Positions 12,091 through 35,035 are shown, counted from the whole stretch's first letter. The stretch: 55,293 nucleotides of DNA, filler included, from Platydemus manokwari (GCA_037951405.1; 5 parts of 5 records of this genome joined end to end with filler, not necessarily neighbours in it); one strand, 5' to 3'. The notes: generated from the letters alone by a model not told the origin. Numbers and translations are program-made.

Positions 12091-12299
12091 GTAATTTATT
12101 CTTTAAATATTGATTATCGAAATTAAAAAAATAAAATATTTGAAATTTATTTATTAAAAAAATATATATATTGTCTTAATCAATTACTTATTCTTATTTA
12201 TCGGTATCAAATCTAATTTTCAATTTAAAAAAGAGTTTGGTGTTGTAGTTTCTGGTACGTAACTCTAGAGTTACTATGTGACAAAACATAAATATTTTG

Positions 12300-12399
12300 N
12301 NNNNNNNNNNNNNNNNNNNNNNNNNNNNNNNNNNNNNNNNNNNTTAATTAATTAANNNNNNNNNNNNNNNNNNNNNNNNNNNNNNNNNNNNNNNNNNNN
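12300..12399. other. Artificial contig linker N44-TTAATTAATTAA-N44
   Basis: Six-frame stop core at 12344-12355; the spacer is exactly 100 nt. Confidence 0.97.
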
Positions 12400-12416
12400 A
12401 TATTATTGATTTCTAG

Positions 12417-15400
12417 AAATCTAAGTTATGTCATCAACGGCTATTATCAAAACCACGTCATTGTGTTAGCCAATGTCGTATTGAATGAATTACAATTGTC
12501 TACCGATTGCCTACTTTTGTCATCTTCTCCTATTTATCCACCAGATTCTGGAATACGAAACACAATCACAATGACAAATCCGCTGAACTGTTCCACTGAA
12601 TTTCTTTGGCAGCCTGTGTTTAATTCAACTAATGGAATTGCTTTTTCCATACGGCCAAAAGAAGGTATTCAACTCGATTATATTCATCTCAACCATTTTA
12701 CTGTTTTACAACTAGATCTTGCTAGATAATTTAATCATATTTTTCAGTAGCTAGATTTTTAATATTGAATTTATCATTATTTGTTTTATTTCTGTGGTTG
12801 GAACTAATTTAAGAATTTTAAGGAGTCGTAGAACCTCATAGTACACTTGACTGCGAAGTTGTATTCCATCCTTCTTTCATGGCTCCAAGTGAAGGAGACT
12901 TTATACTGCGTATTCCTAGCAATGAAGAAAGAAGTATCGACAACAGCACTCAAGATACGGTACCGTCGGACAGTCCTAGTTTATCATTCAATGAAAAATC
13001 TACCATTACTCTTCATTGTGTTGCTAATCTTGGCATTCCACATGTAGCATTTCAATCTCGAAGAGTGATGTTTGGAAATATTCCGATCAATCTCACAACT
13101 TCTCGAACGGCGATTATGTTAAATACTGGCGGAAAACATGCCTATTTTCGAATAATTCCAGATGAATTATATGAAGAATATCCTGGAATGACAATCAATC
13201 CATTGAAAGGTTCAGTACCCGTTGGTGGCCAAGCCGAAATAACGGTGAGATTAGTTGCATCGATCTTTTTACGTTTAACACAACTAGTTATTATTAGTTC
13301 GATATTAGATGCTGGCGGTGTTTTATTATTAAAAAATGTATTTAGAATTTTCACATGACGTATAAAACTAATTACAGATAAAATATTTACCAACAGTTCT
13401 AACCAAATTTGATTGTTCTGTTCCCATAATAATTAGAGGATGGAAAGAATTGGAACTAAAAATCAGTGGGACAGTTATCATTCCTCAAGTAGAAATATTA
13501 CAAAAACGATTGGACTTTGGTGGTGAGACCCATTTGATCAGATTTCTTTTCATTGATAGATAAATTATTCGTTTGTTAGGAGTTCCTGTCGGATCTGAGA
13601 AGATATTGAATTTTGATATAATCAATAAATCACAATGCCGTGCAGAAGTTGAATTCGATTTTGTCAAGAACAAAGATTTCACAATTTCCAGTGAAAATTC
13701 ATCGGAGAATGAAAAATCTGTGATCAATTATGACAATCATAAATGCCTTATTATGCTGAAACCATTGCAGGATTTTACTTGCCAGCTTACGTTTAGTCCT
13801 AAAGAGGTTGGAATACAACAATGTTTTAACTTAATCTTTGTATTAAAATTATTAACAATAATTTTACTATAATAAAAAATTATTATTATTATTATTAAAT
13901 GTAATAATAATATTAATATTAATAATGATAGTAATTATAAGATTAATAGTAATTAATTAATTATAATAATAGTAATCATAATAATAATGTATTATAATGC
14001 TTGTGATGATATGGAACCAAAGCTCAATCACAAAAGGTGGATGGTTATGAATTCGAATTTATCAATGAGAGAATTAGTAAATGATGGATTCGATATAGTA
14101 TCTGATAGTGATGAGTGGTAAGAACTACAAAACCGGACTCTCATTGGACTACTTGTTTCTAGATTATCAGTAATTCAATCAGCAAGCTCTCGGAATCTTT
14201 ACAATTATTTTAATGAAAATTATTATAGAAAACATGTAGATATTTTATAACTGAAAGATTCTTTGCAATACTTTAAATATAAATAAAAGCAATCTAACGA
14301 AAATTGAATGATGTATATATGAAAACCAAGTGCTTTGAAATCCCGAATTATTATACAAAGCAGCATTACTATAAAAATCATTATATAAATTACGTATCCT
14401 AACTTTTAGGTTGCTTCATATGATTTTCCTCTATCAGTCAAGATAAATCAAGTTGAAATTACTCTACCTTCAGCGCAGTCGGATAATACCGATAATTCAA
14501 CTGTCTCCTCTAAGACCATGGGTAAGACACCTCTTCGTACTGGGATCGTTTCAACTCCTGCAACAACAGCAGAAAAATTACTAGCTTCAAATCTTGTTCG
14601 CACTGTGAGTGCTTGTGCCACTCGACAATTGATTGGCATATCTAAAACTAAATTCCAATTTCAATCAAGCTCCAAATCTGAGGAACTCTCAAAATGCCAG
14701 GTATTCATTATTTTCACTCATCAGATGTACACAAATTCTTCAAATCAGATTTATATTTTTATTGTTTTTGTAATTGCACTGTAAATTTTTGGATAGCACT
14801 TTTGAAATGTTTACATTTCGATAGTGGCACAATGAATATGAAATCATGATTATGATAAAATTCTTATTCTCATGGCTTATATTTAGAAAGATAATTTATA
14901 AGAAAGATCAAATGTCAAATTAATATTTACGATTACGACTGTCAGCTTTATGTCTAATTTAATGGGCTATTTCAGAGGTGACCAACTTTTGTGTACGTAA
15001 GATCAATAACATCTCACGCGATAGACTAAAATTGGCTTCAAGATCGACCAGTCGATCGCGATCGACCGGTTGGCCACCCCTGGGCTATTTGAACTAACTT
15101 TATGTTTTAAAATCAATCAAGAAGTTTCATTGATTTTCTGTCATTTAGCGATTTATTAAATGAAGATAAATTTAATAAAAATATCTGTCATTAGCCTTTT
15201 AAAATTATTAAACCTGAAAATATTCCAATTATTAAAATTATTACTTCAGCAATATTTTAAAATAATAATGGTATTTTGAAAATTTTGAAAATTTTATTTG
15301 ATTTATTAGATTTTATGTGTAACTGGTTCTGTAAGTAGTATGAGGACAATCACAGGAATTTTATTTATGAAATTAGTTTACCATCAATTTCAAATCCCAC

Positions 15401-18400
15401 ATTACGAGTTTTGATTTATGTATTTTATCTCTACATTCTCTCATTGGTGTTGTGTAACATTTACCGTTGTGCAACATTGACAATTTATGGTCACTCATTA
15501 TTTTGTTTAAAATATTCGATTCAATTATATTAGTGTAGAGAAATTGTCGATGATCTTTCTAATTTATAAATTTTTCACTTAATTAATTAATTCACAAAAA
15601 TCAAAATTACAAATCATTTACCAATAATAATTGTTAATCCACATAAATTTGTTAATCATTTTCAATAAAATCATTAATAATTTATGCATCAAAGTCATTT
15701 TTAATTAATTGTGACAAAATTGTTTTTAATTTCGAAATTTGTTTGAAAAATTGATTAAAGTTAAAAAATAGAATAAAATTTTAAAATTGTGGAGTGTAAT
15801 GCAAAAATCTATATAGATTTTTTAATTAAATTCTTTAATAACATTTTGAATTTTTTATTTAAGTACTTGAGTAAAATTTTAGTTATTTAGAATCAAATAA
15901 TACATGCACAGGATTTTTAAAATCTGCTAAAAATTAATTATTTTAAAAATGGGTCAAAGTAGATCAAAATGCAATTAATTAAAAATTAGCGAGGACCCCT
16001 TCTTTTAACATTAGATGCAATCAGAATAATATTTAAGATTTTTAGAGTTATTTTATAAAAATAAAGTGACTTCGAAATTATTGAGAAGTGCCAGGAACAA
16101 GGTACTTGTGTTTTTTCTCAAAATAAGTATATTAATATTTATTTAATAAATTGGATACATAGATCCCAAACCTGTCAACGTTGTAATGAAATTAAGATTT
16201 GATTCAAATCATATAAATCGCACAGGTGAAGATGCCACAAATATATAAGTTTCGGAATTCAAATAGGGACTTCGTTCAACAATTCAGCCTTGTCCATATT
16301 GGACATTCTGAATAAAGTATTTTTGGTTCACGGTGCTCACACAAAAAAATTATATTTACAAAATAATATCCATTAGTAAACTAACAACCAACAAATATTG
16401 ACAATTTTTATTCAAATAAAACCAACAATTTAAAAATTATTTATTGAGATACAACAAAATTTGTGGATTACTCGCCAATGAAGGAATATCTTGCCATAGA
16501 AATATAATTCCAGGCCTAAATATAGTGATAGAAATTGACGAGAAATGTTTCGAAAGTGCCAAATATAATAGCGGGCATCGAATACATGGTTTTTGATTGT
16601 CAGAGTTGATATTTGGTTTTTAATCTAAAATTGAATTTTATGTAAAAATTTCATTAAAAAGTGATTACAAATAAATTTAATATCAAATAACTCACGAAAA
16701 GTCATTATTTTAAAATTGGGTCAAAGGACCCTTTTTCTTAACTAAAGCCGAAAAGTCAAATTTATTGATTGAAAGATTGTTGATTGTCAGAGTTTTGCCA
16801 AAATTATTTGAAAATTAATTAATATTGATGGAGTTGAAGCGCGACAATTAAATTAATTTGATTAAAAGTAAAATATAAAATTATAGTTGCACTTTATAAT
16901 TTTATTTAAGTTTTGTTAGATCATTTGATCTGATAAATTATTTCTTGTCTCTGTCCACTGACATTTATAATACCAATGTCGGTGAATTTGGTGGCATGAT
17001 AATGCTAAGAATAATATTGAATTAGTTTATCCACTCATACCTCTACACTGGCCCCGTCCAGGACCAAAATTTTCCCTAAGCAAAGAATTTTGAAAATCTT
17101 CATATATTTATAACTAAAATTCACTGTGATCGTTGTATAGAATTTTGTTAGCAGACTTATTAATTAAATAATCGTCTACTAATTATTGATCTGGTGGCTT
17201 GTGAACAAATTGTTTTGGATATTTGAAAAATTCAAAAATTTTCATTTCTATTTATAGAAAAATTAAAATTACAGAATATGTAAAATTGAAAAATTTAAAT
17301 CCTTTTCATATTTTAATGTAAATGACAATTAATGTTTGTAAAATGACATATAGAAATAGAAATCAAAACATTATCTCAATTTTCCATATCACCCATACAG
17401 TGCCCGGTAAGAAAAAAATTAACAATGTCTATAATCGACCAGTATGGAGCGCTTACTTTAAACGGCTTTCTAAATCGAAGTGCTTTCACGTGAAAGATTT
17501 CACGTAGGTTTGATTGTCACTCTATATATTCAAAAGGTTACAAGAATGCTTTATGGAATTTTTACTGTAAATTACTTCCTAATTGGCATTGATTTTCTTA
17601 ATTGAGCCAACGGATTTATTTGAACTTTAATAATAGTAATTTGAGAATATTATCATAAAACTTCTGTAGCTAAACGTGAGATATAATTAATATGTAACTA
17701 ATCATTACACCACCTTTGCTAAATTTAGAATTAAAATTAATACTTCTATATTATATTTGAAGGCTTAATTTTTTAACCTAGCTTAGCTCCTTAGCAATTA
17801 AAATAATTAAAGTTCGTGAGACATTATTTAATTCATTTATAAGATCAATATTTTATTAAAGAAATATATAAGTTATTATAAACAATTTTCAAAGAATTCA
17901 ATTGTTGTTGTTACGTCATATCTCTTAATGAACGTTTGTATTTTAGAAATTGGTTATTTCCAATAACATGGATCGAACAGTTGAATTGTGTATAAGATTT
18001 TCTTCGGCTACTTGGAAATATGGGCTGGATTTGTTCAATAAGAAATCCATTTCTAAACCAAGACCCATTCCTTTTCAAATTTTCCAAAATTCACAATTAA
18101 TAGCAGCCAATGAAGATTTTACAGCGACATTGTCATCAGTTGGAGAGACAGTTTCTCTTGATATTAATTTTGGGCCTGGTTAGATTTAAAACATTGTAGA
18201 ATTACCATTGTTTATGTATTCATGACAACATATAAGTATTATTATTATTTTTATTATTATTATAAATATAGTTTATCAAGCTAAATAATATTAATATATG
18301 TAGATCAACCTGGTTGTTATGATGGTGAATTCGCAATTTTCGTTAACAATACATTTGAATTTCCATATCAACGAATATATTTATCCGGATATCAAGAAAG

Positions 18401-20614
18401 TCCGAGATTAATTTGCCAACCGAGTTATTTAACATTTATTTCGGCTCCTTTGAAGACTGAAGTTTCTCTTGATTTCAAGATTCTAGCTCTCAATTTTGAT
18501 GAACCAACAACTCTAACAATTGAACTACCTGTTGTTACCAGGCCGGGATCAGACATACCGTTTCAGCCTTTTAAATGTGTTTTACACACATCTAATGGTA
18601 AATATAACACCGTTTCAGTTGTCATGAGGAAATTATTATTATTGTTTTTGACAGAGATTTCATCAATAAAAGATAACTCGAAAATAACGGAAATTCGAGG
18701 AACATTGACATTTATATGTGATGTACCTATCAACATTAGATCATCGATGGAATTCGTTACTGCGTCAGGATTCAGAAAATCTGTAAATCTAAATGCAAGC
18801 GCTGATAATTGCCAGTTTTCATGGCATGCATTTATTAACAAACATCAAGCTGAATATCACATCATTTGTGATGAGGTAAGATTCCGTTATTTTTGCTAGA
18901 TAAATTATTTTCATTGTTTATTTTTATAAGAAATTTAAATCTGTCCTAGTTTTGTCTTTTCAATTACACACACAAAAAATCCGATTTGTTAGTCGCTTAT
19001 ATTTTAAAAATCACAGATTAAAAACGAACTGAATAATCAAGTCACCAAAAAAATTTACTTAAATACAACTATTAAAAACAAATAAATTTAATTTTATATA
19101 AATATTTGGGTTAAATTTGAATTAAAAATTTGATTTATTTAAAATATCTCACTTATCCAAATTTTTTTCCATTATACTTTCAAATCTAAAATTGAAACAA
19201 CTCTCAATAGTTTCACATCTTCTGAAAATTGTAAATTCATTTAAAATGTCGATGAGTTTTCAGAACAAATTTCAATTATTAAATAAATATAGGTGTGTGC
19301 CGTAATAATTTGATTTATTATATTTAATGTTTAGTTGCATAGATTTAGAATTATTTTACCACCGTTAAGATAAGAAAAATATTATTTTTATTATTTATTT
19401 ATTCTTAATATTCTACTTATTATAGAAAGTAGAATAACAAGAAAAATCTTGATAAATATTGAAATTAATTTGAACTTTTAGTAGTTCAGAAATTTTTTAA
19501 ATTACAATATTAAAAAATTTTTGAAATAGGGAAAGCATTTAGAGGGCACTGAAATTTCAAAATCTACCAAGTCGGTGGATGTTGGTGAAGCTCAATTGAA
19601 ACTCTTAAACAAGGATGTGAAACATCTCCATTACATTGGAGATGGTCGGTCTCATAGTCGAAACAGTACAACTGTAACTAGTTCAAACTTTGAAGAGTCG
19701 TCAGTGACTTACGAGGAAACGACTAGTGAGAATGGTAAGTCTTGTATTTTCTAATTTAAATTCTGTAAAGCATTTCTGAGTAATAAGATTTAAACGCAAT
19801 TTGGAATTAATTTCATTTTGAATTTTCAAGATTCTGTTACATTTTAGAATATAATCTTTCGATAATTCTTCATGCTTATATCAATTATACATTAAGATCA
19901 AATTACAATGGCATCTCAATAATTATGCTTTCAGAGTTGAAATATTAAATTTATCTTGGATAAAAATATAAAAATGAGTTTACGTTTTCTGAGATATACT
20001 TGTTGTCGACAGGAAAATGATTTTGTCATTTTAATTCTATTATTCGGATTTCCATATTTAAAAACCAACAATAGTTGTAACGAAATCCATAAATGATCCA
20101 TTTTGAAATTGTTCTTGTAATCGATTGTTTATCAGATATTGATTAATTATTTTTATATTGTTTTGATATTTTTATACCCCTACAGCATGATTTTTGATAG
20201 AAATTATTATTTGATCTATCTATTTTTAGAATCAGCATATATCGGTACTCCTGTTGCGTATCGTGATGGTGCATTGAACAATAATGGTGAAAAAGTGAAA
20301 TATAAATCATCCGCAAGCCCATCCATCAAACCCAATCAAAAACCCGCAGAGGGTTCAAGTGGGAGCACTTTAGAGATGAGCAGTTCGGTTATTTCTGATA
20401 AAAATTATATCAATATGTATGTTGCTCCTAATATGGGTCTGGGACTTATTAATGATGACAATGAATCAATGACTACTCAATCGAGTTTCAACAAAGATTT
20501 CGACATTCCAACCAACTACGATGCAGAATTGTTATTAATCGTTCAAAGATGGTTTACGATGCATGGATGGCCTGGAAATCTATATCCAATTAATGTACCT
20601 GTCAGCTTTAGAAA
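12417..20614 (+). CDS. CFAP47: Cilia- and flagella-associated protein 47, ten internal exons (partial at both ends)
   Basis: Phase-compatible GT-AG exons 12417-12664, 12823-13244, 13378-13522, 13580-13806, 14410-14700, 17947-18178, 18304-18597, 18655-18875, 19530-19734, 20230-20614. They encode tandem ASH/Ig-like repeats (FGNIPINLTTSRTAIMLNTG, INPLKGSVPVGGQAEITI) and CFAP47-like motifs ASADNC and VQRWFTMHGWPG. Confidence 0.82.
14973..15082. mobile_element. 110-bp hAT-superfamily MITE in a CFAP47 intron
   Basis: TIRs CAGAGGTGACCAAC / GTTGGCCACCCCTG (12 of 14 match); perfect 8-bp TSD GGCTATTT at 14965-14972 and 15083-15090; internal GATCGAC palindromes. Confidence 0.9.
15780..16010 (-). repeat. 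Dispersed repeat, copy 2 (inverted relative to 8005-8235)
   Basis: See copy 1. An internally deleted piece of the same end (ttttaaaattgggtcaaaggaccctttttctt) recurs at about 16707-16742. Confidence 0.65.
16150..16596 (+). mobile_element. Merlin (IS1016/ISXO2-like) transposase remnant in a CFAP47 intron
   Basis: 16501-16596 reads NIIPGLNIVIEIDEKCFESAKYNSGHRIHGF, matching the Merlin motif G.IVEIDESKFGKRKYNRGHR. An upstream CQRC is seen at about 16172. Heavily decayed. Confidence 0.75.
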
Positions 20615-21728
20615 GTAAGATATAGATGATTATATAAATATATTTTTTGAAATTTAATTTAATTCTCAAAAATGTTTATATTTATTTCTAGATTTACCAG
20701 TTACCGTGAGACTGGATCGAATTATTTCTTTGTCAAATAAATCTTTTAAACGACAAATTTCAGATACTTAAAAATATATTTAAGCTATTATTCGTTTGTT
20801 ATACAGTCGAACTCGATTGGTAACAACTTGTTTACCCCATGAAAAATGGTGATAACGACTGCGACATTAAGTGAACATACTAAAAAAACTAATTAAATAT
20901 AATTAAAACGTAATCACAATTTGTTATAAATCGATCGTAAGCGATGAGTCATCGTAAATCCATTGGTCGTAAATCTACTGTCACCCGTTATAAATTTATC
21001 GAACTAGTACTATCAATCTATATTTAGGTAGAACTTTTGAATTATATAAGTATTTTAAAAAATGGGGTAATATCGCATTTTCTCAATTTACTTAAACAAT
21101 TTTTTATCACATTTATTAGTCCCTTGTTAAAAGTCTCAAAATTAACAAATTTCTTCATTAAAATAAATTAATTTTAATATATAGTCGATAGCGAATTGAT
21201 TTCTGAAATGACTTTATATAAGTTAAATGTCATTTAATATTACTGTAAAGATTCAACTCAAATTTAAAATCAATTTCCATTCTTTAAATGTTTAACCAAT
21301 AATAAGAAAATTTTTTAATTAATTTGTGGAAGTTTATAAATACTAATAGATAGCTCAAAACAGTATGGTCATTTTACCAATTTTAAAATTGTGTTCGTCG
21401 GACACAAATATGTAACCACGCATTGAGGAAAACTTCTTAAATTTAAAATTAATCTTTTTGTGATTCTATTTAGTTTGGCAACGTAATTAGAACCTGGTGA
21501 AGATGATGTCTTTCAAGAATTTAACTTGTATTATATTTTCATATTATTCTATGGAAGAACTAGACCGATATTGGATATAGGAATTCAGAAATTTTATAAA
21601 TGGCTTTCATTTTGTAAAGTTAAACTTAAATTTCTCGCTATGACGTTTCTAACCTTTTTACTTTCATTATATTAATTATGTTAATCAAATATTATAAAGA
21701 GATCACTAAAAATAGTGTATACGATAAG

Positions 21729-21904: not shown

Positions 21905-21974
21905 ATTAAATAATTTATTAATTAATATTTTCATTTCAAATTTTCTTCATTTATTAAAATACGTATTTAATTTT

Positions 21975-22043
21975 ATATTATTATGGTTGTTGTTGTTATT
22001 ATTATTATTATTATTATTATTGCTGTTGTTATTATTATTATTA
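21975..22043. repeat. (ATT)n/(GTT)n microsatellite
   Basis: Visible trinucleotide runs; these generate the spurious poly-Ile/Val ORF. Confidence 0.9.
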
Positions 22044-25000
22044 CACTATATTTTTTCATTCACTTTTATTACACCATAAAAAAGTTACATTTTGAAAAGT
22101 TACAATTGAAAATAAAAATTATTGACAATCCTATTTCAGCTCTTCAAAGACTTCATCAGCATCTCTGCACTGAGAAATATGGGATTAAAGACATTTTCAA
22201 TAATGTTTTCGTTTATAAAAATATTGAAAACAAATTAGCCAATCATAAATCAAATAATCGATCAAATTCCGGATTATTGTATCGTGGCTAAATTTACTAA
22301 AATACCTTGAACTAATTCTAAAGTGTTGACCCGCAACAAATTATGAAGTATTATTGATGTCAGGCCAAAGCTTGTCATTCCAATTGAGCTGCTAATAGAA
22401 CAGTCTCGAGCCGATTGAAAAGTAAGTTTCGGTTTTGATTTTTATATCGCATCTTAGTGAGATAACATTTCAAATATAATATTGATGTACTCATTAATAA
22501 ATAATTTATTAAATAGACACTTAATATATTGTAATTTAAGTTTGACAGTGAACTTACATCCTGAACTAATCAATAATATTAGTAACCCAAAATATGCATT
22601 TAATGTCTTTCCGAGAATTTTAAAATATAAAATTAAAATTAGAGTTATTGTCATATTATTAATTATTATATTATTATTATGTTATTATCATATTATTATT
22701 ATTAGTGTTAGTTAATAAAATTTGAACTTACTAGTTAATTTAAAAGTAGGCTTAATATCAAGTTCAGGTAGCAGTGATTTAAAGCAAACAAAAAACAAGG
22801 AATTATAAATATTTATATTAACGATGAAACTGGAATGAAGACTTAAACAAATATTCTCGGCAAATTGGCAAATTAAAAATGTATAATAACATTCAATTCG
22901 CTCAGAATTCAAAACCCAATTGAACAGCATTTATATCATTTGGACGAATTGATTTTGATATTGTAGAAAGGCTATTGAAGATCATTGATCTTTAAGTGAA
23001 ATGAAAAGAGATTGTGTAAAATTGTCATGAGAATTAATCGCTGATAGATGATATTAAAGGATATCAAAGGATAAAATTAACCATTAGTCGATTCTAACAA
23101 ATATCGGGTAAAATAATTTTTCAGTATTTATGTATTGGAAAATCAATATCACAGAATGTATTGAGGGATCAACGGTTCTTTAGTGGAACTCAATCTTTTT
23201 ATCTGACTAATATTTGATAAATTGAAAATTTGTGTACATTTTGTGTGACAGTTGCTCGTTTTTGCTGTGTGAGAAGTGTGATCTCTGACGAAATTAAATT
23301 ATTAAAGAAAACCTAACCTATACATCCCGGTATGAAAATCGATAAAATATTGTATTGCTTTTCGTAAAATTTTGACATCCTTTATCTGGGGTATGATTTA
23401 TGTATTGTGTTATTATGAATCATTAATCGTGACAGCATTAGGCTACTCTTTTTAATTAACTACAGCTATTTACAAAAAATTTACTGTATTATTTGTTGTC
23501 AAATATAACTGTACTGTACAATTTTTATCTCATTTTAAACTTGATATTACAATATTGATAACAACTTAAGAAGAAAGCATTTCAGCTTCTCGAATAAGTC
23601 ATGTTTTGCTTCTTGCTTTGACAACGTTTTTCGTAGACTGGTGAAATAGATTTATTAATATTTTCGTCCACCTTATATCGCAAATTATAAAGATAGCCAA
23701 CTAAATTCTAAACGTCTCAAATAGTATTTTACTTTAAAAATACCTTTTCACAATGTTTATCAATATACGAGCCTTTATTACCATTTATTATCAATTTTTA
23801 AATCGACATATGATTCTGAGGTTATTTTTTCATTCTGCTGATAAAAGTTAAAAAAGAATCTGTATGATCAATGGACCAATAAATATTTGAAATAATTACC
23901 TCAGAATAATATTCTATTTTACATATGCATACCCCTATTAATGTCTAATAGATAAGTGTGCATTTCGTGATAAAATTCTTAACAAGCCTGTTCATTTGTG
24001 ATAAGTTTCTTTCCCATTTTGTATAGCTCATCAATTTTATTGACTGTACGGTGTAATGCATCAAAATAGCTTTTTCGGTGCTGATCATTCCATATGAGAA
24101 CATAATGCATAATGAAGAGAAAATAGCTCTCATATTCAAAATAAATTTTTACCGAAACACATTTTTCAAGTTTAGAAGACATACTAATGACCAATGATGT
24201 TAGGGGAGAAATTTATTTCCTTTGAAAAATTTGGTATTATATCCAAAATTTCCTTCCCAATGTTTTTCAAGTGCGTCCAAGCTTTCAAAAAATTACATCG
24301 GAAAAAGTGATCGACAGCAATTGCGACTACGCACTTCTATCACAATATTTATCGATAACAGTTTTCATCAGATCTGATGACGTTTTTCCAATTCAAAGAG
24401 ATTTAAAATTGTATTTCCTTTTAATGAAAACCACTTTGATCTACACCAATAGCATATACTGTGATTCGCTGAGGTGACGTCATTTTTATTGAAGTAATTA
24501 CGGTAAATAGATAAATCAAAAATACTCTTGGAACTTATTCTAACCCAAGCTCACAGTATTTCTCAAATCCAAACAAAATGATTGTCTGAAAAATATCCAA
24601 AATCGATTTTTAATTTTAGAACCGCGCTGGGGAAACATACTTGTACATTTTATTATTGATTTTTTGAATTTTCTTTTCTAAAATGCAGAGAAAACAAATT
24701 TTTTGTGTTGATTTCGTTTAATTTTCCCAAAATCTTATGACAAAATCTATGTTTTTGTAAGCAAGAGGAAAGTAAATACTTTCAGATGATAGAGGACATT
24801 GAAATGAAAATCATAAAGGGAAATCAAAACAGTAAGAATCAACAAAGTTAATTAATGCCAGTAATAGCATTACAGCACACCACTATTTTGGAAAAAAGTA
24901 AATATGGAAATATGAAAATCGTTGCGATGGTAACCATATCTACTGGTTACAAAATTTCGGAATTATTACAACTTTTCGATGTGTTGTTGTATATTCCCAT

Positions 25001-25617
25001 TAAAATTATTATGTATCTCTCGATTTCCCTTGTTCCACTAAATTACGACAGATTACTGATCACCACTAACTAGTTCTGATTTGAGTGAGCGTTGGAACAA
25101 ACTATTTACGGTTTTCTCGATCTTTGAATATCACGCAAAATTTCACTGGAATATCTTTCGCCGAGAAATAAAAAGCCAAATAGCGATATAAATTTTTTAC
25201 TTGACCATGAATTTGAGAATTTTGTTAACATTTATTTCAAAGTCACTATATAAAGGATTTTATTTCAAGGTTATGATTATGATTAACATTGCCTCTTTGG
25301 TGATAAATTTTAGTAGCCATATATAAACCTTATGGAAAAGTCCATTTATTGCTGATAAGATAGTGTTTTATATTTTAATATAATTTATTAAATTTTTTTA
25401 AAAAATGACTTGAAAGAATCACTACTCAATACATTATCTACACAAATACGTTTTACAAAGAGATTTTATAACGGATAATAATAGGAAAACCTTGATAAGT
25501 AGAAAAATTAATGTTATAAATTTTAAAGCTGCGAAAAGACATTCGATAATATATTAATCAACAGAAATAAACTGGCATAAGATTTATTTATCACAAAACA
25601 ACAACTGTCAACTATTT

Positions 25618-25824
25618 TTATACACCCATTATATTACCTCGACTACGCTTCCCCATTCTTGTAGCCCAATAAGGACGCTTGAGAAGACTTCTTTTGTAGA
25701 ATGTTGTGTCATCAAGTTTGTCATTGAGCTCAAATTCTGGGTAGGAATCTTTGATAAATGCTTCTGTGACAAATTCATTCAACATAACAATGAAAACAAT
25801 TGTCAATGATAAAACGACCTTCAT
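25618..25824 (-). CDS. Neuropeptide prohormone encoding PYWATRM-amide (similar to planarian AYWASRMamide / spp-1-type peptides)
   Basis: ATG at 25824 gives signal peptide MKVVLSLTIVFIVMLNEFVTEA, an acidic spacer, then KR-SLL-KR-PYWATRM-G-KR (dibasic cleavage sites plus amidation Gly). Confidence 0.88.
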   Translation of the reverse strand: MKVVLSLTIVFIVMLNEFVTEAFIKDSYPEFELNDKLDDTTFYKRSLLKRPYWATRMGKRSRGNIMGV

Positions 25825-26846
25825 TATAAGCTTGCTAGACAAATCATCAAAAACTTCTTAATTTATGAACACTAAAATCCAATAAGATTGTACCTTTGCC
25901 TTTAACCAATGACATGTCTTCTCCACTTAATTCTGGAATTTCAGTTTCAATATTAAATTTCTTTTCTTCTCGAAATATCCAATGATAGACCAATTTTTAT
26001 GTTTCATTTTTATTTGATGATTGGCCGTGAATATTTTTATGAACTTTTTAAATCTGATCTAATCACAAATTTTAATAAGAACCACTATAACACAACCTAC
26101 AAAAATTTAAGATAGATTCGGATTTGTGAATTGGACATAGATGAAAATAAGCGGGTGGATGGAAAAGTTGATTACACTTATTTTATTTTTATTTAATGTT
26201 TATCTATAATAAATATAGTTCATTTTCTTCATTAATGAGTTTAAATATAAATCAAACCGAAGCACTTGTCAGGGGATAAAACTTGAATGTGTAATGAATA
26301 CAAAAGGCCCTATTTAAATAAATATATTTGAACGGCAGACTTAAATTTCAATGCATACATATTTGATTTTGAAATTTCTAAAATCAAAGAAATAAAATAA
26401 TTCACAAAATTATTAAACTTGAATCTATACAGATATTTTAACAAGTGCGGAGTAGTTTGCATATGAAAAGTTGGAATTTTTCTCAGTCATTCAAAATTAA
26501 AATTAAGAGAAAAAAGAAAATATTAAACAATTTATATAAGGACCTTTTAATTATAAGTAATAAGTGTTTATTATATAATAAGTTTGACAATGTCTTATCA
26601 ATTTGATTATATAAGAATAAACTAACAAATTAATTAATTTTATTAAATATTGAATTCGAATATTATTTTGATTTAAATTTTTACAACGACGAACCTACAA
26701 AAAATGATTAAAATCATAGCAAGTAATAAAAACTCATTTTTTCAACATATGAATAGAAAAATTAAAATGCCATTTTACAATTTGACTAAAATTTTCTTTG
26801 TTTATATATGCAAATCTTTTAAAATTCTCAAACTTTTTTATCAAAT

Positions 26847-28103
26847 ATGGATATCGATCTGGATGATGTTGAACATACAGACAAAACCAGTTAGTAAAAT
26901 TATAATTAAAAATTAAGTTCTATCAAATTTTGCAGATGTTCAAAAGGAGAAAAGGATTCGTAAAAGTGTTTCACGTTTAAGTGAAGTATATGATAAATCG
27001 TTCGAACTTCAGTCTGAAAGTAAAATGAAACCAGTTGTGGGTAATGGTATTAAGTTAGGTGACATTATTCGCATTCAAAATGCATCTCATCGAAGTAAAA
27101 TCACTGGTGAATTAGCACAAAATATTCATATGCTTTGTTATCGAACAAAAGGCAAAGCAAACAAACGACTATTATCGATAAAAAAATTTAATGGATTTGA
27201 TTCAAATGATGATAGTGAATTTAAAAAGCGTCTCTCATTGACTGAAAAGTGAGATCGATATGTAATTATAACATGATTTTAGAATTCATTTGTCGATTAG
27301 AATGAAGGTCGATGATTTGAAGCTGATTTGTGATTTATTTAATGTTCATTCCACTGGTAAACAGAAAAAAGATATAGCAAACAGTATTGTGGAATATTTA
27401 AAATGTCCTTTTGAAACTGGATCGGAAATATTTCGCATGAATGCTTTGAAACAAAAATCCAAAGGTGAGATTTGTGGGTTGTAAAATGAGAAATTAACGA
27501 ATGGAATAAGGTAAATCTCAACCAAAATCGTCGAATAACAAACAACAAAGCATCAAATCAAATACGAGCGATCTCAATGATGTCGATTTGAGTTCTATTG
27601 ATAATGATAAAAATGAATTGACAAACTCTGCAAGTAATACCGAAGAAACCGACAAAAATCATTCAGAAAATTCTAATTTGGTTAATAAAGAAAATTTAAT
27701 CAAGAAAAAGCCAGCAATGAAGGTGAAAAAAGATAAAAAAGAAAATAAAAAATTGCCCAAAGACAAACAAAAAACTGTAAACATCGAACAGCCGTTGCAA
27801 GAATCATCACAACAATTAAATGCCAACAACGTTTGCAGTGAAAACGAACTGAATTCATCGGGAGATAATTTATCCGATTCATGTTTTAAGGAGAAAATAT
27901 CAGAAATTCTTAACGGTGCTGATTTGAACAAGATCACGCTTAATCAGGTGTGCGATCGAGTAACAGAACAATTTCCAGATCGAGATTTGATTCACAAGAG
28001 ACAACATATAAAATCGCTTGTCAAGCAAGTAAGATTTTTTGTCCCTCTTGGTCATGTTGAATTGATTTTTTTTTATTTCAAGGTCATCGATCAAGCTTCG
28101 TAA
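26847..28103 (+). CDS. DEK: DEK chromatin protein (SAP and DEK-C domains), 5 exons
   Basis: Exons 26847-26889, 26936-27248, 27301-27464, 27511-28028, 28083-28103. Motifs KRIRKSVSRL, GNGIKLGDI, IKKFNGF, LKLICDLFNV (SAP) and EILNGADLNKITLNQVCDRVTEQFPDRDL (DEK-C). Confidence 0.9.
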
Positions 28104-28929
28104 AACAAAAATGCTGTCATCGAAAAATATTAAAAATGATTCACAAATATTATAAAAATTGAGATGTTTTACAAAATTCTTCCGTGTTTGATGATTTATT
28201 TATGAAATTTTTATTTTTCTGTTTGTCATTTTGTGAAATTTGTAAATCATAAATATCGATTTTTATATTTTAATTATTGATTGGATTATATAAATCATGT
28301 TCATAATTTTTGACGGAATTGCTATTTAATGTGTGCTTGATCGAAAATTTTCTTGGACTCCAATCAATGGTTTTATTCGTTTGATCAGACTTTGTCTGTG
28401 TTTAACGACTTTAATATGAATAAATTAAATTCGTTTTCTAAAGCAAAAAACCAATTTTCATTCGAGTCGTAGATATTAAAAGCAGTGTTAAAATCTTATT
28501 CGTTATGTAGTTTAGCTGACAAATTTTGGTCATGGGATTTAATCATTTGTTACTTTTGAGATGACAACTGAGTTGCCGAGTTATTGACATTTGTTGAGGA
28601 TATAGTGGTCAAATGCGTTAATTTTCGTCCATTATCTCAGATTGATTTCTTTGTTGTGTAATAAATTCCAAATTGCACAAACATTGGACTTTTAATTAAA
28701 TCTGTTTTTGAAATATTTAACTCGATAGTTTAAAATATTAAATGAAACTTGCGTGTATTATATTGATCCAGATTTCCATAGAAGAGCAGTGCAATGAATA
28801 TTAATAAACTTTGAATTGTTACAAGCCACTGGGATTACGTAATTTAACTTGCGTTTTTTTTAATTAAACGCTATAATGCTTTTGAACTTGCTGAACTTTA
28901 TGTTAGACTCTTATCAAGGTCTTAAAAAA

Positions 28930-31900
28930 GTATGCTCAGCGAGATGACGGGCTTAATTAGGCTTCCAATCCCAGGAGACACTCAGATAATCGATTTTCCG
29001 AAGAACCTAAGTTTTATTCTGATGGAAAATCTAAACTTACCTGGCATGAAACCAAACTTTTCTAAGCAGGCGAGGCAATCGCAAAGGTTGTACAGGAAAA
29101 AAGAGTTCTCCAACAAGGATGACAGGTTCAATACCTCCAGTCCTCAGGAATGCTCATAAAACCGATCTGAGATCTGGTAAACGAGGTCCGAGAAGGCCAA
29201 AAAATCGAAATTTTCGAAAAACTGAAAATTTCGCAAATGAAAAAGATTTGGAAAACCAACTGATAGAACATCTTAAACGCCATAAACGTCCAATCTCCAG
29301 AGACAATAGACGAAACCAAAAATCCAGATCCAGATCTAAACGCCGACGTCCCTATATCGAAATAGTAGAAAAACAAAAAGATTATGAAGCTTCCAAAAAT
29401 AACAACAAAGAGAATCCAAAACCTATATTTATCGACGATGAAGGGACAAAGAAATTATACCATGGGCAGCAAAACCATAGGAAGGATACAAGAACCGAGA
29501 ATATGAAGATAACAATTCAAGATAAACACAAAAAAATGCAGAGGAAAATTGAAATCTCGAACAAATCTTTATCAATGAATCTAGATAAAGCGAGGAACGT
29601 AATAAGTATAAATATTGATTGCAATAAATGCGAACATTCAACACCAAATATGAAAAAGTTGAAACATGCTATCGTCAATATAATTGGACCAAGAGCAAGC
29701 GAGAAAACCATGGAGAAAAGAAAACTAAAAAAACAAATCTCCAACCACTTGCGACGGAAAGAATGTTGATAATACTATGGATATTGACCTCGACAAAGAA
29801 ACTTATCAACCTGTAATTATCTCTCCATTCAAAGAAATTATCAAAATCCAAGTGATTGCCAGTACTCATACAACGATCGAAGAACCTGAACCGAGAGAAA
29901 CTACAAAGAAAAAGAGACAACTGATGAGCTCACCTATCACCAGCCCGAGCCAAGAAGTAATTGCATCTATGTCAAGAAAGATCCCTAGACCTAATATCTC
30001 AACAGAACAATGCAAAAATAATTTATGGGGTTGCACTGAGGGAGATTCCGGTTCATTTAGTTATGACCGCTAAGTGCTGGATAACCCACTTTGGTTTACC
30101 GGAGACCAAAATGATGCGTACATTAAATCTATTCCTGAAAATCCGAAGATCTTATACATCAATTCATACAACACAGAAGCGATTTTGCAATAAAATAAAA
30201 AACCAGGTTATCTCTCAATTTTGTAAAACATTCCACAATTGGCAAGTACAATAATTGCACCACTCAATATATAAAATACGCACTGGACTCTCTTCTGTGG
30301 ACAGATCGACGACATCGCAGAAATAGTCGATCCTCTCGGAGACCAAAGTCCTTTCTTACAATTGGCCATGGAGAGGACAAAATTCCTGTGTGATAACATC
30401 AATCAGTCGACAAATGGAATGATCATGGTCATAAAATTATTTACAAGTTTCAAAACTCAAATTTGCCAATCAAACAGTGATGACTGCGGACCCATGATTT
30501 GTGGCTATGCTGAAAAGGTTATGACTGAAGATAAGAATGCAGCAACAGAGATCGAAATAATTAGACAAAAAAGTACTTGATGTACATTGATCTATGGTCG
30601 AGACAATAGTGAACAAGGAAGATTATGCTCTTTTCTCTGAGAAACATATCCCCCTAGTAACAAGAAGTGAATTTAAACAGAGACGCAACCTAGTGCTTGA
30701 CCCTTTCATCAGTAAAGTAATAACGAGAAACAAGGTAAAATATATTATTGATAACCTTGACTTTATGTTTTTCAAAGATCGAGAACTAATATTCTGTCCA
30801 GCGCTCCTGAAGTAAAAATAATGGATCCTGGTGAAAATAAACGTTAAAGACGATCTCAATGTTGGACCGGATGAACGAGATTATTACCGATGAACACAGA
30901 CAAATACTCATAAATGCCAACAAAAACTTAACCATACTATTGTGAAAAGAGAATACTTTAAAGAAGGAAGGCCACAATCCAATTAGACTAACCCAAATGC
31001 AATTCGGGGACAGTGGCCCAATTGTCTTTGGCTACATCAGAAATATATATATATATCTACAAAGAATCAACACCAGAATAATCAAGGAGAAGGACAGGAA
31101 ACTTATTTTCGAGAGCGAGGATAAGATGAAAAATATGAGAAACCTGGTTTTGTCGATAACCAATAACAATCCTGGCAAAATTTACATGCCTACAGTATGT
31201 TCACTCATAGCAAAATTGTATTTTTTGTTAGGACATACTATGTGACTCACACCAGACTGGTGAAAATGGAGAGGCAGATACAAAAGGTCTTTAAGAAAAT
31301 TACTGGGGTCCAAAACTCTGCTCTAACTACTTCTTTTACGCAAGCAAGTCAAATGGTGGGTGTGGGTTATAGAGTATTGTAGCAGAGTTCACAGTCCAAG
31401 CCATATCAAATGGAATAGTGATACTTAAGAGTAAACTTGCAATGACAAGAGAAATCGAGAGAGAATCGTTACAACAAGCGTCCATTCAGGACCTTCTAAA
31501 CTCTCTAGATTGGCTGAACTCGCACCTTGGGACAAAGGAGAAGAAGCAATCTTGATGGGACAAAATTCGAGAGGCAATCAGATACGATCATATGGAAGTG
31601 CTGACAACCATTAGCTTTGAAATCATCAATGGAGATATTGGAATAAGAATCTATTAAAATGTTACAACAGATAGTGGAGAAAGAAGAACCTGAACAAACT
31701 GACCAAGATACTACAGATATGCTTCAACAGGTAATCAATAACTGAACCAGCTCTATTTTTCTAGTCGATGTGCCCCATGGACGAGGAAAAACTGATAAAA
31801 AATGCAAATGAAGTCAACTTGACAAAGTACGATGATCCTCGGAAAAAAACAAATACCCTCAGGCCAGGACGGACTGTTGAGCTTTATACATTCATAATTG

Positions 31901-32240
31901 GAGTTCTTGGCACTTGGAAATTAGAGAATGAGATCATTCTACGCAAACTTGGCTTCAAAAAAGACATATCGGAGAAAATACACTACGATTGTATCCGGTC
32001 AAACATCAATTCCACATATCAGCAATGGCAATTCCACCAAGGGAAAGCTATATTACTTTCGAGGACAGGAACCAGATCAAATGACATCTCGGACGACGAA
32101 TATGTGTGTTCTGAGGATGATGTGGTGTCCAGCAAACTTAAATAGGCGAGAATAAGAGCGCGTGAGACGAAGAGAATCCTGTGATATTTTGCCTGACACT
32201 ATGTGGTGATGGTGTCGAACACTGTCTGACTTGTATTATA
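28930..32240 (+). mobile_element. Decayed NeSL/R5-type non-LTR retrotransposon (Ulp1 protease, RLE), with the RT region internally deleted
   Basis: Basic N-terminus; Ulp1/C48 motifs IAPLNI..HWTL (30281), VDPLG and QSNSDDCG (Cys 30485); C-terminal RLE region CPMDE..KYD..FIIGVLGTW. Collinear with 49565-53200 but jumps from the protease region to post-RT sequence at about 31190. Ends approximate. Confidence 0.82.
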
Positions 32241-34164
32241 AAAAACTGTGTTTTATTAATAAATATTTGTATAATAATCATAATATCACCTATTAATACA
32301 TATTGGATAAATACAAAGTAAGGAGATATAAAATAAACATTATAGAAATACATAAATTTCAAAATTAAATAGACAGTAAATAATGATAATCATAATGTCT
32401 ACAAAATTTGAGAAATCCTCAAGACAGCAATCACTGAAATAATGTTTCACTGTCTATTAAATTGAGTCTCAATGGGTTATACGGCCTCATAGCCTTGATA
32501 TGTATATCCGAATATATCCATACTTATTCCTGATTCTCCCAAACCCTAATGTTTCTTGTGGTATGTATGGTATGATGCTTGCATTCAATTTTCTTTGGTG
32601 TATGCATGCAAAAATTTAAGTCAATTTAATGGAAACTCAGTTTTCAAGTTCTGCTCACAAATTTTATCAACAACAAATCAAACAAGATATCAAAAAATGT
32701 TTTATTATATCGCAAATATTGCCAAAATACAATAAGACTTTATTATGAACTTTCTCTTATTTTACAGAAGAAATATTGTACTACTACTACCGTCTTTTGG
32801 TCTGGAATTGTAAGCTAGTCTTGAACCAATTTTTATTAGTTGTAAAGTGTAGTTTTAAACTGTATTTGTTGTTATATATTTAATAAACGTTTAGTGTAGC
32901 AAAAGTTGAGTTTTTGATCGAGGATTGTTAAAATATAAGTGTAAAATATTGAAACTGATAAAATTAGAAATTCCTTTGGATCATTTTTGCCAATCAATTC
33001 TATTATCATATGGTTTTGATTGCGAGGTTAAAATAATAACAATAATGTTTTATAGATTGTAACTTGAGCTTGATTAGAACTCAGTTGAGACTGATTAAGA
33101 CAACGGTGATCCACAATAACAAAAATAATAAATTTGAGACTGATTAAAACAAAAAGAATCAGTAAGCCCGAAACACATCATGCCAATTTATCATTATCTT
33201 ATTATTTATGTGTATTATATTCGTTATTACATCAATTTAACACTATTTTCATTTACAATGTTAACATTATTGGCCTTTCTTAATATAACATCATTATTTG
33301 GTTATCTAATTATTAATAATTATTAAGCCGGTAAAATTTCATTATTCTGAGATAAATAAACCCAATAATTATAAACATGGAACATAACGAATGATAAATT
33401 ATAAATGAAGCTTAACGGAAATTAATGGAATGCATTATTATCTCAACCCTAGCAGAAATTATAACATATCACAAAACCAAATTCCATCACAATTAAAGGA
33501 GAAATAAATATTTTCACAATTTGATGAATTCTCATAATCATCTTTAATTAATATTTACAACAACTTCAAAGATTCGAAAATTTTTAACAATCTAATAAAG
33601 AAAGATTAAACATACATGAAATTGTTAAGCAGTCGGAAGATAAATATATTGTGAAAATAAACGAAGAGCAAAGATAAAATGCTATGAAAAATTCATTTTA
33701 TTATATTTCAGATAAAAATATTATTTTATAAAAATCCTGCAAAAATATACTTTTTAATTTTTAGCTGCAATTGTATTTATATTGAAATAATTAATTAAAT
33801 TCCTATGATAAAGTAAACAATAGTATGGACTGAATTTATACATTTTTAATTCAAGTGAAAATGTTTATATATTAAACTATTTGTTTTTGTACTTAAAATA
33901 TATTTTAATTCAAATATAACGTACATTTGTAAAACTTGTATGAACTTATTTTAATATTGTAATTTAAAGAAATATAATTTAGTATTTAATTTTCGAATAA
34001 CGAAATTTGTTTAACTAAATTTAAAAGCTTTTTCAAATTTTCAATTCATTAATTTCAAATTATTGAAAAATTAATTTAAACTTAACTATACTATTAAGTT
34101 AATAAAAATTAGCATATTTCATAATAAACGATATAATATTTTTCCTTCAAATTGTATTGTAACT

Positions 34165-34557
34165 ATGGTTGATAAATTATCTGACAGTAAATTTCATCGA
34201 TCAGAGTATAATTTAGACTTATTTAAATTATTATGACGAGTATATTTGCAAATTAAGATCTCTTAGAAAATTGTCACAAACCATTAGGCATGGTTCATTT
34301 TTGGAACCAGTGATTCTCAATCCATTTACAAGTCAACTAAAATTGCCATGGTACGAATGGATGAAAGTAACATTCATAATATATTAGTTATTAATATTTA
34401 TTATTCTAACCCAGGTAGGATTCATGTCTGTAACAGTAGCACCGATCAGATGCGTTTTAATTATCACTACTTTTGGACTTACATCGTTGTTAGCGTCAAT
34501 TGGTTGTTTATTTTCTGACGAGACTACTTTTATTGGTACTCTACCGTATTGGCGAAA
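34165..34557 (+). CDS. Lysophosphatidylcholine acyltransferase (LPCAT1/2-like), first three exons (3' partial)
   Basis: Exons about 34165-34205, 34258-34366, 34415-34557 give ..RHGSFLEPVILNPFTSQLKLPWYEWMK/VGFMSVTVAPIRCVLII..LPYWRK, matching LPCAT2 RQASFFPPPVPNPF..LLPIRVLL..GWRRK. Exon 1 is less certain. Confidence 0.78.
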
Positions 34558-35035
34558 GTAATTTTATTGATTTTGCGATGGGTAATAAATCAAATAAAAG
34601 TATCATGTTTATTAATGGTTATACATTTAAAATATTCGAAAACTGTTGTTTGTTATTCAGTAGACAAAATTATTATGTTAAAAAAATCCACGCATGTTGA
34701 AATATTTCTCTGATAATATTTAACAGTAGTATATGAAAAATCGATAAAAATCATTGATGGTTTTAATTGGGTGTTGTTGTAAATACAAGATCCAATCACG
34801 TTGGTTGTGTGATAAATATCGATCAAATATATTTTGTGACAAGTATTGTTCAGTGATATAATTAATTTAATTAGTCAACAAATAATGAACTTGAATTACA
34901 AAAAATTGATTAAAGTGAATCTATAATACTCCTAATATTTATTTCTCGAAATTTAATGTGTTGATTATTGGCAATATTTGTTTATACATATTTATGATTA
35001 TTATAATAATTATTATTATTGAATAATTATCATCT

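What the first reader, a model, noticed from the sequence alone, without database searches (positions are those of the whole stretch)
30040..31100. NeSL-type retrotransposons carry a second, catalytically dead Ulp1-like domain behind the active one
Seen: domain 1 has IAPLNI..HWTL..VDPLG..QSNSDDCGPMICGYA (His, Asp, Gln and Cys in place). Directly after comes a parallel unit LDPFIS..LIFCPALL..xWILV..QMQFGDSGPIVFGYIRN with Ser at the Cys position and no His. The divergent second element repeats this: NCGPFVCGYA, then LDPFLS..KWILV..MLDPEG..QINFGESRPLVFGYIRN. Known: NeSL-clade elements encode a Ulp1/C48 protease upstream of RT. Inference: the same loss in two divergent families means a conserved protease plus pseudo-protease tandem predating their decay, perhaps a SUMO/Ubl-binding module that counters SUMO-dependent silencing. 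I do not know of this being described.
Basis: partly seen in the sequence, partly recalled or inferred. Interest (0 to 1): 0.75.

Follow-up and report, generated by a model that had tools for sequence, protein, structure and literature searches.

The report
Disabled second protease domain in retrotransposon
A decayed copy of a very abundant retrotransposon encodes a Ulp1-type (SUMO-protease-like) domain directly followed by a much-diverged duplicate that has lost the catalytic His and Cys; the duplicate is statistically real, but its fold, its presence in other families and any function could not be tested.

Summary
Window 28900-32250 (+) is a decayed copy, without a reverse transcriptase, of a high-copy retrotransposon. 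I read it by eye as a non-LTR element of the restriction-like-endonuclease (RLE) type.

Domain 1 (30074-30577) has His, Asp, Gln and Cys in Ulp1 order and spacing (16/52/6). It gets a weak Pfam C48 hit (E 0.07) and a strong language-model match to Ulp1 clusters (0.95).

Domain 2 (about 30690-31150) repeats the three motif blocks at nearly the same spacing (16/49/6).
- BLASTP matches the Cys box at E 0.001.
- In a spacing-constrained three-block test, 0 of 2000 shuffles reach the observed score, and nothing else in the 13-kb piece comes close.
- The Cys position is Ser (AGT).
- The His position is a stop here and reads Gln (CAA) in all 15 contigs of other copies.
- Trp, Asp and Gln are kept.
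- Domain 2 has 3 stops in 217 codons, against 13-23 in the other + frames, so it was coding until recently.

Not shown:
- a C48 fold for domain 2 (single-sequence models failed);
- the second family, which lies outside my piece;
- NeSL membership, because this copy has no RT;
- any relative in the protein or contig databases;
- any SUMO-related function.

Interest is moderate.

The parts
28900..32250 (+). Decayed copy, without an RT, of a high-copy retrotransposon. Both ends are approximate and were not mapped.
   Evidence: GC is 0.36 here against 0.21-0.30 in the flanks. 1044 contigs of run X1 lie on 28900-32200, and depth rises towards the 3' end. There is no second copy in the piece.
29050..29766 (+). 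Open 239-codon basic N-terminal region. It holds a C2H2-like finger remnant: Cys 29620, Cys 29629, His 29665, and Asn at the position of the second His (29677).
   Evidence: The only database support is a weak Pfam zf-C2HE hit, E 0.072. The finger is read by eye.
30074..30577 (+). Domain 1, a Ulp1/C48-like protease domain. His 30281, Trp 30284, Asp 30329, Gln 30467 and Cys 30485 are present. In-frame stops lie at 30191, 30224 and 30272. The frame upstream of about 30074 is uncertain.
   Evidence: Pfam PF02902 gives E 0.07 and 13.4 bits on piece 30275-30577. The Atlas's nearest clusters are Ulp1 protease, score 0.95, with 199/256 features shared.
30578..30593 (+). Junction. TGA (30578-30580) ends the domain 1 frame. 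ATG at 30594 opens the domain 2 frame 13 nt later. This is either a frameshift in this copy or a true boundary between two ORFs.
   Evidence: Contigs with different sequence upstream of 30599 and 30568 appear among the loose ends.
30591..30848 (+). Domain 2, N-terminal half. It holds the LDPF start, the IFCPALL strand, stops at 30813 and 30819, and Trp 30822 (WILV). The codon at the His position, 30819-30821, is TAA here and CAA (Gln) in 15 contigs of other copies.
30849..30849 (+). Frameshift inside domain 2. Other copies carry two or five extra bases behind this place.
   Evidence: table 4.
30850..31242 (+). Domain 2, C-terminal half plus tail. Asp 30865 (MLD), stop 30943 (TGG in 12 contigs of other copies), Gln 30994, Asp 31009, Ser 31012 at the Cys position, and Gly-Pro after it.
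31243..31555 (+). Short remnant without a long open frame, where an RT would be expected. There is no RT motif and no Pfam hit.
31556..32145 (+). C-terminal region read as a restriction-like endonuclease, running through three frames. Motifs in order: RYDH..VL, TD-x17-VDV, K..N..TKY, IIGVLGTW. It ends with a TAG stop at 32143. This is a motif reading only.
   Evidence: No Pfam, PDB or word-search hit.
31727..32250 (+). 3' module shared with many more copies. Depth is 9,000-21,000 here against 1,500-3,000 upstream. Thirteen contigs diverge upstream of 31727.
   Evidence: tables 2 and 7. One search shows that the loose-end consensus is unlike the window upstream of 31727.

Best explanation
The locus is a dead copy, with its RT deleted, of a very abundant retrotransposon. 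I read it as an RLE-type non-LTR element of the R2/NeSL kind.

Its progenitor encoded, in order:
- a basic, zinc-finger-like N-terminus;
- a Ulp1/C48 cysteine-protease domain with a complete His-Asp-Gln-Cys set;
- directly behind it, an ancient and strongly diverged duplicate of that domain.

The duplicate keeps the scaffold landmarks at Ulp1-like spacing: the strand before the His position, the Trp that follows it, the Asp, the oxyanion Gln, and the Asp-x-Gly-Pro of the nucleophile helix. It has Gln at the His position and Ser at the Cys position.

Shown here: the duplicate is real, it was coding in the family's founder, and both catalytic residues are replaced in the copies sampled.

Inferred: domain 2 is a pseudo-protease. 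It cannot cleave, but it probably keeps a binding groove. It would then act without catalysis in one of two ways. It could partner or regulate domain 1, as the inactive member does in active/inactive isopeptidase pairs. Or it could hold a ubiquitin-like protein or the element's own polyprotein.
For: Domain 1 is C48-like:
- motif order and spacing of 16/52/6;
- Pfam PF02902 at E 0.07;
- Atlas score 0.95, with all ten best hits in one family or clan.

Domain 2 is homologous to domain 1:
- BLASTP gives E 0.001;
- Smith-Waterman z is 3.4-3.9;
- the three-block test with constrained spacing scores 56, against a shuffle maximum of 33, 0/2000;
- the His and Asp blocks, given the Cys block, reach p = 0.004;
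- the genomic background maximum is 31.

Domain 2's spacing of 16/49/6 is close to yeast Ulp1's 17/49/6 (His514, Asp531, Gln574, Cys580; own knowledge).

Domain 2 was coding. It has 3 stops in 217 codons, against 13-23 in the other + frames. Three of its four breaks read as sense codons or as an intact frame in the other copies.

All 15 contigs read CAA at the His position.
Against: - No profile or structural evidence supports domain 2. Pfam finds nothing on its pieces, the Atlas gives no usable hit, PDB phmmer finds nothing, and the AF2 model is unusable.
- Pairwise identity is only about 20-25%.
- The His/Asp piece alone gives no BLASTP alignment.
- No relative was found anywhere, so conservation beyond this family is unshown.
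- The variant table is cut to 40 of 262 rows, so some copies could carry Cys at 31012.
- The copies sampled may all descend from a non-autonomous founder.
Confidence: 0.58

Rival explanations
1. Domain 2 is a true C48 duplicate, but the loss of His and Cys is decay in the founder of a non-autonomous lineage without an RT. The autonomous relatives would then carry either two active protease domains or only one. On this reading there is no conserved pseudo-protease module.
For: This copy has no RT. The region between domain 2 and the RLE seems continuous in most contigs, so the sampled family may be non-autonomous. Both replacements are one nucleotide away from His (CAY to CAA) and Cys (TGT to AGT).
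Against: In the same founder, domain 1 kept all four catalytic residues and the frame was largely open. Random decay would have to hit exactly the two catalytic codons of domain 2 while sparing Trp, Asp, Gln and Asp-x-Gly-Pro. That is unlikely.
Confidence: 0.17
2. Domain 2 is not related to C48. It would be a linker, or the N-terminal domain of a second ORF that starts at ATG 30594. The motif likeness would be chance plus shared composition.
For: No Pfam, Atlas, PDB or representative-library signal for any piece of domain 2. Plain Smith-Waterman reaches only p of about 0.003-0.02. A stop followed by an ATG lies at the junction.
Against: Three collinear blocks lie at nearly identical spacing: 0/2000 shuffles reach the score, and the genomic background maximum is 31 against 56. 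BLASTP gives E 0.001 for the Cys box. Even domain 1 is barely seen by Pfam, so silence on shorter broken pieces carries little weight.
Confidence: 0.2
3. Domain 2 is still an active hydrolase that uses Ser as nucleophile.
For: Ser sits exactly at the nucleophile position, and the Asp and the oxyanion Gln are kept.
Against: The general base His is replaced by Gln in all sampled copies. I know of no clan CE enzyme with a Ser nucleophile and no His (own knowledge).
Confidence: 0.03

Closest known systems
Ulp1-like protease (PR) domain of nematode NeSL elements and Utopia-1_TSP (PMC4640811; Malik & Eickbush 2000, not readable here)
   Same: A Ulp1/C48-like cysteine protease encoded in the N-terminal part of an RLE-type non-LTR retrotransposon. 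It sits upstream of where the RT lies.
   Different: Those elements are described with one protease domain. Here a second, catalytically disabled copy follows it. The host is not a nematode as far as I can tell (coded organism, AT-rich genome). No spliced-leader, tRNA, rRNA or U2 target flanks this copy. This copy has no RT, so the clade is unknown.
Cellular Ulp1/SENP proteases (MEROPS C48, clan CE)
   Same: Domain 1 has His-Asp-Gln-Cys in the same order and at similar spacing. Domain 2 keeps the Trp, Asp, Gln and Asp-x-Gly landmarks at 16/49/6, against 17/49/6 in yeast Ulp1 (own knowledge).
   Different: Both domains are far from the Pfam model: domain 1 scores 13.4 bits against a cut-off of 20.7, and domain 2 gives no hit. 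Domain 2 lacks His and Cys.
Planarian LIN and R5 families, NeSL-related, in Repbase (named in PMC4640811 and PMC7650587)
   Same: RLE-type non-LTR elements from an AT-rich flatworm genome. They would be the natural relatives if the window comes from a planarian.
   Different: The papers read here mention no protease for these families. They describe them as specific for 28S or tRNA genes. The sequences could not be compared because Repbase is not on hand.
Active/inactive isopeptidase pairs (MPN+/MPN-: Rpn11-Rpn8, CSN5-CSN6, BRCC36-Abraxas). Own knowledge; a functional analogy only.
   Same: An active isopeptidase domain is paired with an inactive paralogue. The paralogue keeps the fold and serves as scaffold, activator or substrate holder.
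   Different: A different fold and clan. Those pairs are separate polypeptides in cellular complexes, not a tandem in a transposon protein. No binding was tested here.

Membership tests
Peptidase C48 (Ulp1/SENP): domain 1 | Catalytic His, Asp, oxyanion Gln and Cys in this order at family-typical spacing | tested here: met
   His 30281, Asp 30329, Gln 30467, Cys 30485. Spacing is 16/52/6.
Peptidase C48 (Ulp1/SENP): domain 1 | Score at or above the gathering threshold of Pfam PF02902 | tested here: not met
   13.4 bits against 20.7, E 0.07, on the 101-residue stop-free piece only. The domain is cut by three stops, so it could not be scored whole.
Peptidase C48 (Ulp1/SENP): domain 1 | Nearest neighbours by language-model features are C48 clusters | tested here: met
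   Score 0.95, 199/256 features shared, and all ten best hits in one family or clan. This counts as a lead.
Peptidase C48 (Ulp1/SENP): domain 1 | Clan CE fold | tested here: inconclusive
   The AF2 single-sequence model has pLDDT 63.9 and is all-helical, so it is unusable.
Peptidase C48 (Ulp1/SENP): domain 2 | Catalytic His | tested here: not met
   The codon 30819-30821 is TAA here and CAA (Gln) in 15 of 15 contigs of other copies.
Peptidase C48 (Ulp1/SENP): domain 2 | Catalytic Cys | tested here: not met
   AGT (Ser) at 31012-31014. No uniform alternative is listed among the other copies, but the list is truncated.
Peptidase C48 (Ulp1/SENP): domain 2 | Non-catalytic landmarks (Trp after the His position, Asp, Gln, Asp-x-Gly) at family spacing | tested here: met
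   Trp 30822, Asp 30865, Gln 30994, Asp 31009. Spacing is 16/49/6.
Peptidase C48 (Ulp1/SENP): domain 2 | Significant sequence similarity to a C48 domain | tested here: met
   Against domain 1 only: BLASTP E 0.001, block test 0/2000, and a genomic background maximum of 31 against 56. No Pfam hit on the pieces.
Peptidase C48 (Ulp1/SENP): domain 2 | Clan CE fold | tested here: inconclusive
   Only a 99-residue piece could be folded. It gave pLDDT 59.0 and an all-helical model. The whole domain is broken, and no reference exists for a read-through.
NeSL clade of non-LTR retrotransposons | RT that groups with the NeSL clade | not testable with these tools
   There is no RT in this copy. Only about 310 bp lie between domain 2 and the RLE region, with no RVT hit. 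No other copy could be fetched.
NeSL clade of non-LTR retrotransposons | C-terminal CCHC plus restriction-like endonuclease | tested here: inconclusive
   PD..D..K-like and GxxGxW motifs were read by eye in 31556-32142 across three frames. No Pfam, PDB or word-search support.
NeSL clade of non-LTR retrotransposons | Site-specific insertion (SL1, tRNA, rRNA or U2 genes in known members) | tested here: not met
   No tRNA gene and no Rfam family anywhere in the piece. The element lies about 800 bp downstream of a DEK_C exon.
Non-LTR retrotransposons in general | Copies truncated at the 5' end, so copy number rises towards the 3' end | tested here: met
   Summed contig depth is 1,500-3,000 in the 5' half, 4,700-7,800 at 31231-31785, and 9,000-21,000 at the 3' end. 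Part of the rise comes from a 3' module shared with another family.

The most novel reading that the evidence does not exclude
A conserved tandem of an active Ulp1-type protease and a natural 'substrate-trap' pseudo-protease (His to Gln, Cys to Ser, binding groove kept) is a functional module of a flatworm retrotransposon lineage. The dead domain would hold SUMO or another ubiquitin-like protein and so help the element escape SUMO-dependent silencing. It might sit at the head of a second ORF that also encodes the RT.
Probability: 0.1. Interest if true: 0.7.

Novelty: new variant of a known kind. Interest (0 to 1): 0.4.

Why it matters
Ulp1-like proteases in NeSL-type elements have been known since 2000, but their role has never been tested. 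A paired active and inactive arrangement would point to something beyond simple polyprotein processing. One possibility is regulated deSUMOylation. Another is capture of a ubiquitin-like protein, in an animal group where SUMO- and piRNA-dependent transposon silencing is central to stem-cell biology. It would also add a clan CE example to the growing list of pseudo-enzymes that partner their active paralogues. As it stands, the evidence is one decayed copy plus coarse information from contigs of other copies, so this is a lead and not a result.

Tried and rejected
Searches for relatives, all blank:
- Word searches with the domain 1 piece, the domain 2 N-piece and the RLE piece.
- Exact look-up of six ORFs.
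- phmmer of the domain 2 C-piece against 1.84 billion representatives. It gave one hit, P0001, a SUEL-lectin repeat protein. That hit matched by a repeated FGDPCPGIFKY motif and is spurious.
- Two metagenome scans.
- PDB phmmer for three pieces.

Blocked or low-yield steps:
- AlphaFold2 without an alignment gave low-confidence all-helical models for the domain 2 C-piece (pLDDT 59.0). It did the same for domain 1, which is C48 by other evidence (pLDDT 63.9). The method has no power here, so I ran no fold search.
- I did not send a read-through of domain 2 with X at the breaks to Pfam or to AlphaFold.
- Complex prediction with SUMO was not run, because domain 2 is broken and nothing here shows binding.

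Readings considered and dropped:
- The 97-codon open frame at 29961-30251 as the true frame of domain 1's N-terminus. The frame of 30074 carries the C48 landmarks.
- A Myb-like or RT N-terminal identity for domain 2. It has no matching motifs.

Full report
**What is at the place.**
The piece 21905-35035 is AT-rich, with GC of 0.21-0.30. One block of GC 0.36 lies at about 28900-32400. On the + strand this block carries a chain of open stretches in changing frames:
- a 239-codon basic region (29050-29766) with a C2H2-like finger remnant;
- domain 1 (30074-30577);
- domain 2 (30591-30848, then 30850-31242);
- a short stretch with no open frame (31243-31555);
- a C-terminal region (31556-32142) that ends in TAG.

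No second copy or fragment lies elsewhere in the piece.

**The element is a high-copy repeat.**
One public run (coded X1, organism A) holds it. At 80% likeness or better, 1044 of its contigs lie on 28900-32200. Of these, 104 are at least 99% alike, 219 are 95-99%, 404 are 90-95% and 317 are below 90%. Summed depth rises from 1,500-3,000 in the 5' half to 9,000-21,000 at the 3' end. That is the pattern of 5'-truncated non-LTR copies. Part of the rise has another cause. Thirteen contigs diverge upstream of 31727 into sequence unlike the window, so the last 400-500 bp are shared with another, more numerous family.

**Class of element.**
I read the C-terminal region as a restriction-like endonuclease of the R2/NeSL kind. 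The motifs, in order, are RYDH..VL, TD-x17-VDV, K..N..TKY and IIGVLGTW. This rests on my own knowledge of those motifs. Pfam, PDB and the word search give nothing for these pieces. Only about 310 bp separate domain 2 from this region, and they have no RT motif, so this copy lacks the reverse transcriptase. 'RLE-type non-LTR' is therefore an inference, which I put at about 0.75. 'NeSL clade' cannot be tested. No tRNA gene or Rfam family flanks the element, so the site specificity of known NeSL-related families is not seen at this locus.

**Domain 1.**
The frame of 30074-30577 contains His (CAC 30281), Trp, Asp (30329), Gln (30467) and Cys (TGC 30485). The spacings are His-Asp 16, Asp-Cys 52 and Gln-Cys 6. 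Three in-frame stops interrupt it. The one at 30224-30226 reads TAC in other copies. The 101-residue stop-free piece gives Pfam Peptidase_C48 at E 0.07, 13.4 bits, below the 20.7 cut-off. It gives no PDB hit by phmmer. Its nearest Atlas clusters are 'Ulp1 protease family' at 0.95, with 199/256 shared features, and all ten best hits fall in one family or clan. I accept domain 1 as a divergent C48/clan CE domain with a complete catalytic set.

**Domain 2: is it more than chance?**
Four tests bear on the likeness to domain 1:
- A plain Smith-Waterman comparison with X at the breaks gives z of 3.4-3.9, and 5-20 of 2000 shuffles reach the score.
- BLASTP of the two stop-free pieces aligns the Cys box with the Ser box at E 0.001. 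The small His/Asp piece alone gives nothing.
- I took three ungapped blocks from domain 1 around His, Asp and Gln..Cys, and laid them on domain 2 with each spacing free by +-3 residues. The score was 56. Shuffles gave 4.4+-6.6 with a maximum of 33, so 0 of 2000 reached it. With the Cys block held in place, the His and Asp blocks alone reached p = 21/5000.
- The same scan over all six frames of the 13-kb piece covered about 25,700 positions. Outside domain 1 itself it found nothing above 31, except domain 2.

Domain 2's spacing is 16/49/6. Yeast Ulp1 has 17/49/6 (His514, Asp531, Gln574, Cys580; own knowledge). I put homology of domain 2 to a C48 domain at about 0.75-0.8.

**Domain 2: coding and catalytically disabled.**
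In its two frames domain 2 has 3 stops in 217 codons. The other + frames have 13-23. That makes it as open as domain 1, which has 3 in 168. The contigs of other copies differ from this copy at the breaks:
- 30819-30821 reads CAA in all 15 contigs (depth 3633 of 3633);
- 30943-30945 reads TGG in 12 contigs;
- two or five extra bases lie behind 30849.

So the founder of the family had an open frame through domain 2. The residue at the His position was Gln, not His. The Cys position is Ser (AGT 31012-31014). No uniformly different letter is listed there, but the table shows only 40 of 262 rows, so a minority of copies with another letter cannot be excluded. Trp (30822), Asp (30865), Gln (30994) and Asp-x-Gly-Pro (31009-31020) are kept. 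Both replacements are one base away from His and Cys codons. This pattern, with the two chemistry residues gone and the scaffold and groove residues kept, is that of a pseudo-enzyme. Engineered Cys-to-Ser SENP mutants are used as substrate traps (own knowledge). That makes a binding role conceivable, but nothing here tests it.

**What could not be shown.**
- *Fold.* Domain 2 is broken into pieces of 74, 23, 34 and 99 residues. The tools take no read-through by reference, and I did not type one. AlphaFold2 without an alignment gave unusable all-helical models for the domain 2 C-piece (pLDDT 59.0) and for domain 1 (pLDDT 63.9), so I ran no fold search.
- *Relatives.* Three word searches, an exact look-up, phmmer against 1.84 billion representatives (one spurious lectin hit), two metagenome scans and PDB searches all found none. 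This shows the family is missing from these collections. It does not show that the tandem is unique.
- *One ORF or two.* The domain 1 frame ends in TGA at 30578, and an ATG opens the domain 2 frame 13 nt later. Some contigs diverge upstream of 30568 and 30599.

**Comparison with what is known.**
Kojima & Jurka (PMC4640811) describe an N-terminal Ulp1-like protease in nematode NeSL families and in Utopia-1_TSP. It is drawn as a single domain. They list planarian LIN families among the NeSL relatives without mentioning a protease. Searches for tandem or inactive Ulp1 domains in transposons found nothing relevant. Malik & Eickbush 2000 is not held, and Repbase is not on hand. If the tandem holds up, it is a new variant of a known kind, namely a protease-bearing RLE retrotransposon.

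**Verdict.**
Whether the pseudo-protease is conserved, and what it does, is unproven. Probabilities:
- a disabled C48 duplicate that was part of the ORF: 0.58;
- a duplicate whose catalytic loss is decay in a non-autonomous lineage: 0.17;
- no relation to C48: 0.20;
- a Ser-based active enzyme: 0.03.

I only described what other copies read at given places.

Noticed in passing
window 27025-28103 (+): A host gene lies just upstream of the element. The ORF 27588-28103 carries a DEK C-terminal domain (PF08766, E 2.3e-08). ORFs at 27025-27252 and 27290-27484 may be further exons of the same gene. The element lies about 800 bp downstream.
   Followed up: partly
window 25618-25842 (-): A 74-codon ORF with a hydrophobic, signal-peptide-like start, dibasic KR sites and a Gly-Lys-Arg motif. 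It looks like a small neuropeptide precursor. It has no Pfam hit.
   Followed up: no
window 31727-32250 (+): The element's last 400-500 bp have 3-10 times the contig depth of the rest. Thirteen contigs switch to unrelated sequence upstream of 31727. This is a 3' module shared with another, more numerous family, possibly a SINE-like partner or a sister subfamily.
   Followed up: partly
window 29961-30251 (+), frame of 29961: A 97-codon open frame overlaps the start of domain 1 in another frame. In addition, 15 contigs of other copies read TGA at 30023-30025 in the frame I used upstream of domain 1. The true frame between about 30020 and 30074 is therefore uncertain, and this copy probably has one more frameshift there.
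   Followed up: partly
window 29233-29454 (+): A stretch of the basic N-terminal region has very low contig depth, 177-394 against 1,500-2,900 beside it. It also holds a short ATCCAG repeat (29322-29336). This looks like a hypervariable or subfamily-specific segment.
   Followed up: no
window 30578-30596 (+): A TGA stop ends the domain 1 frame, and an ATG in the domain 2 frame follows 13 nt later. This is either a possible ORF1/ORF2 boundary or a private frameshift.
   Followed up: partly
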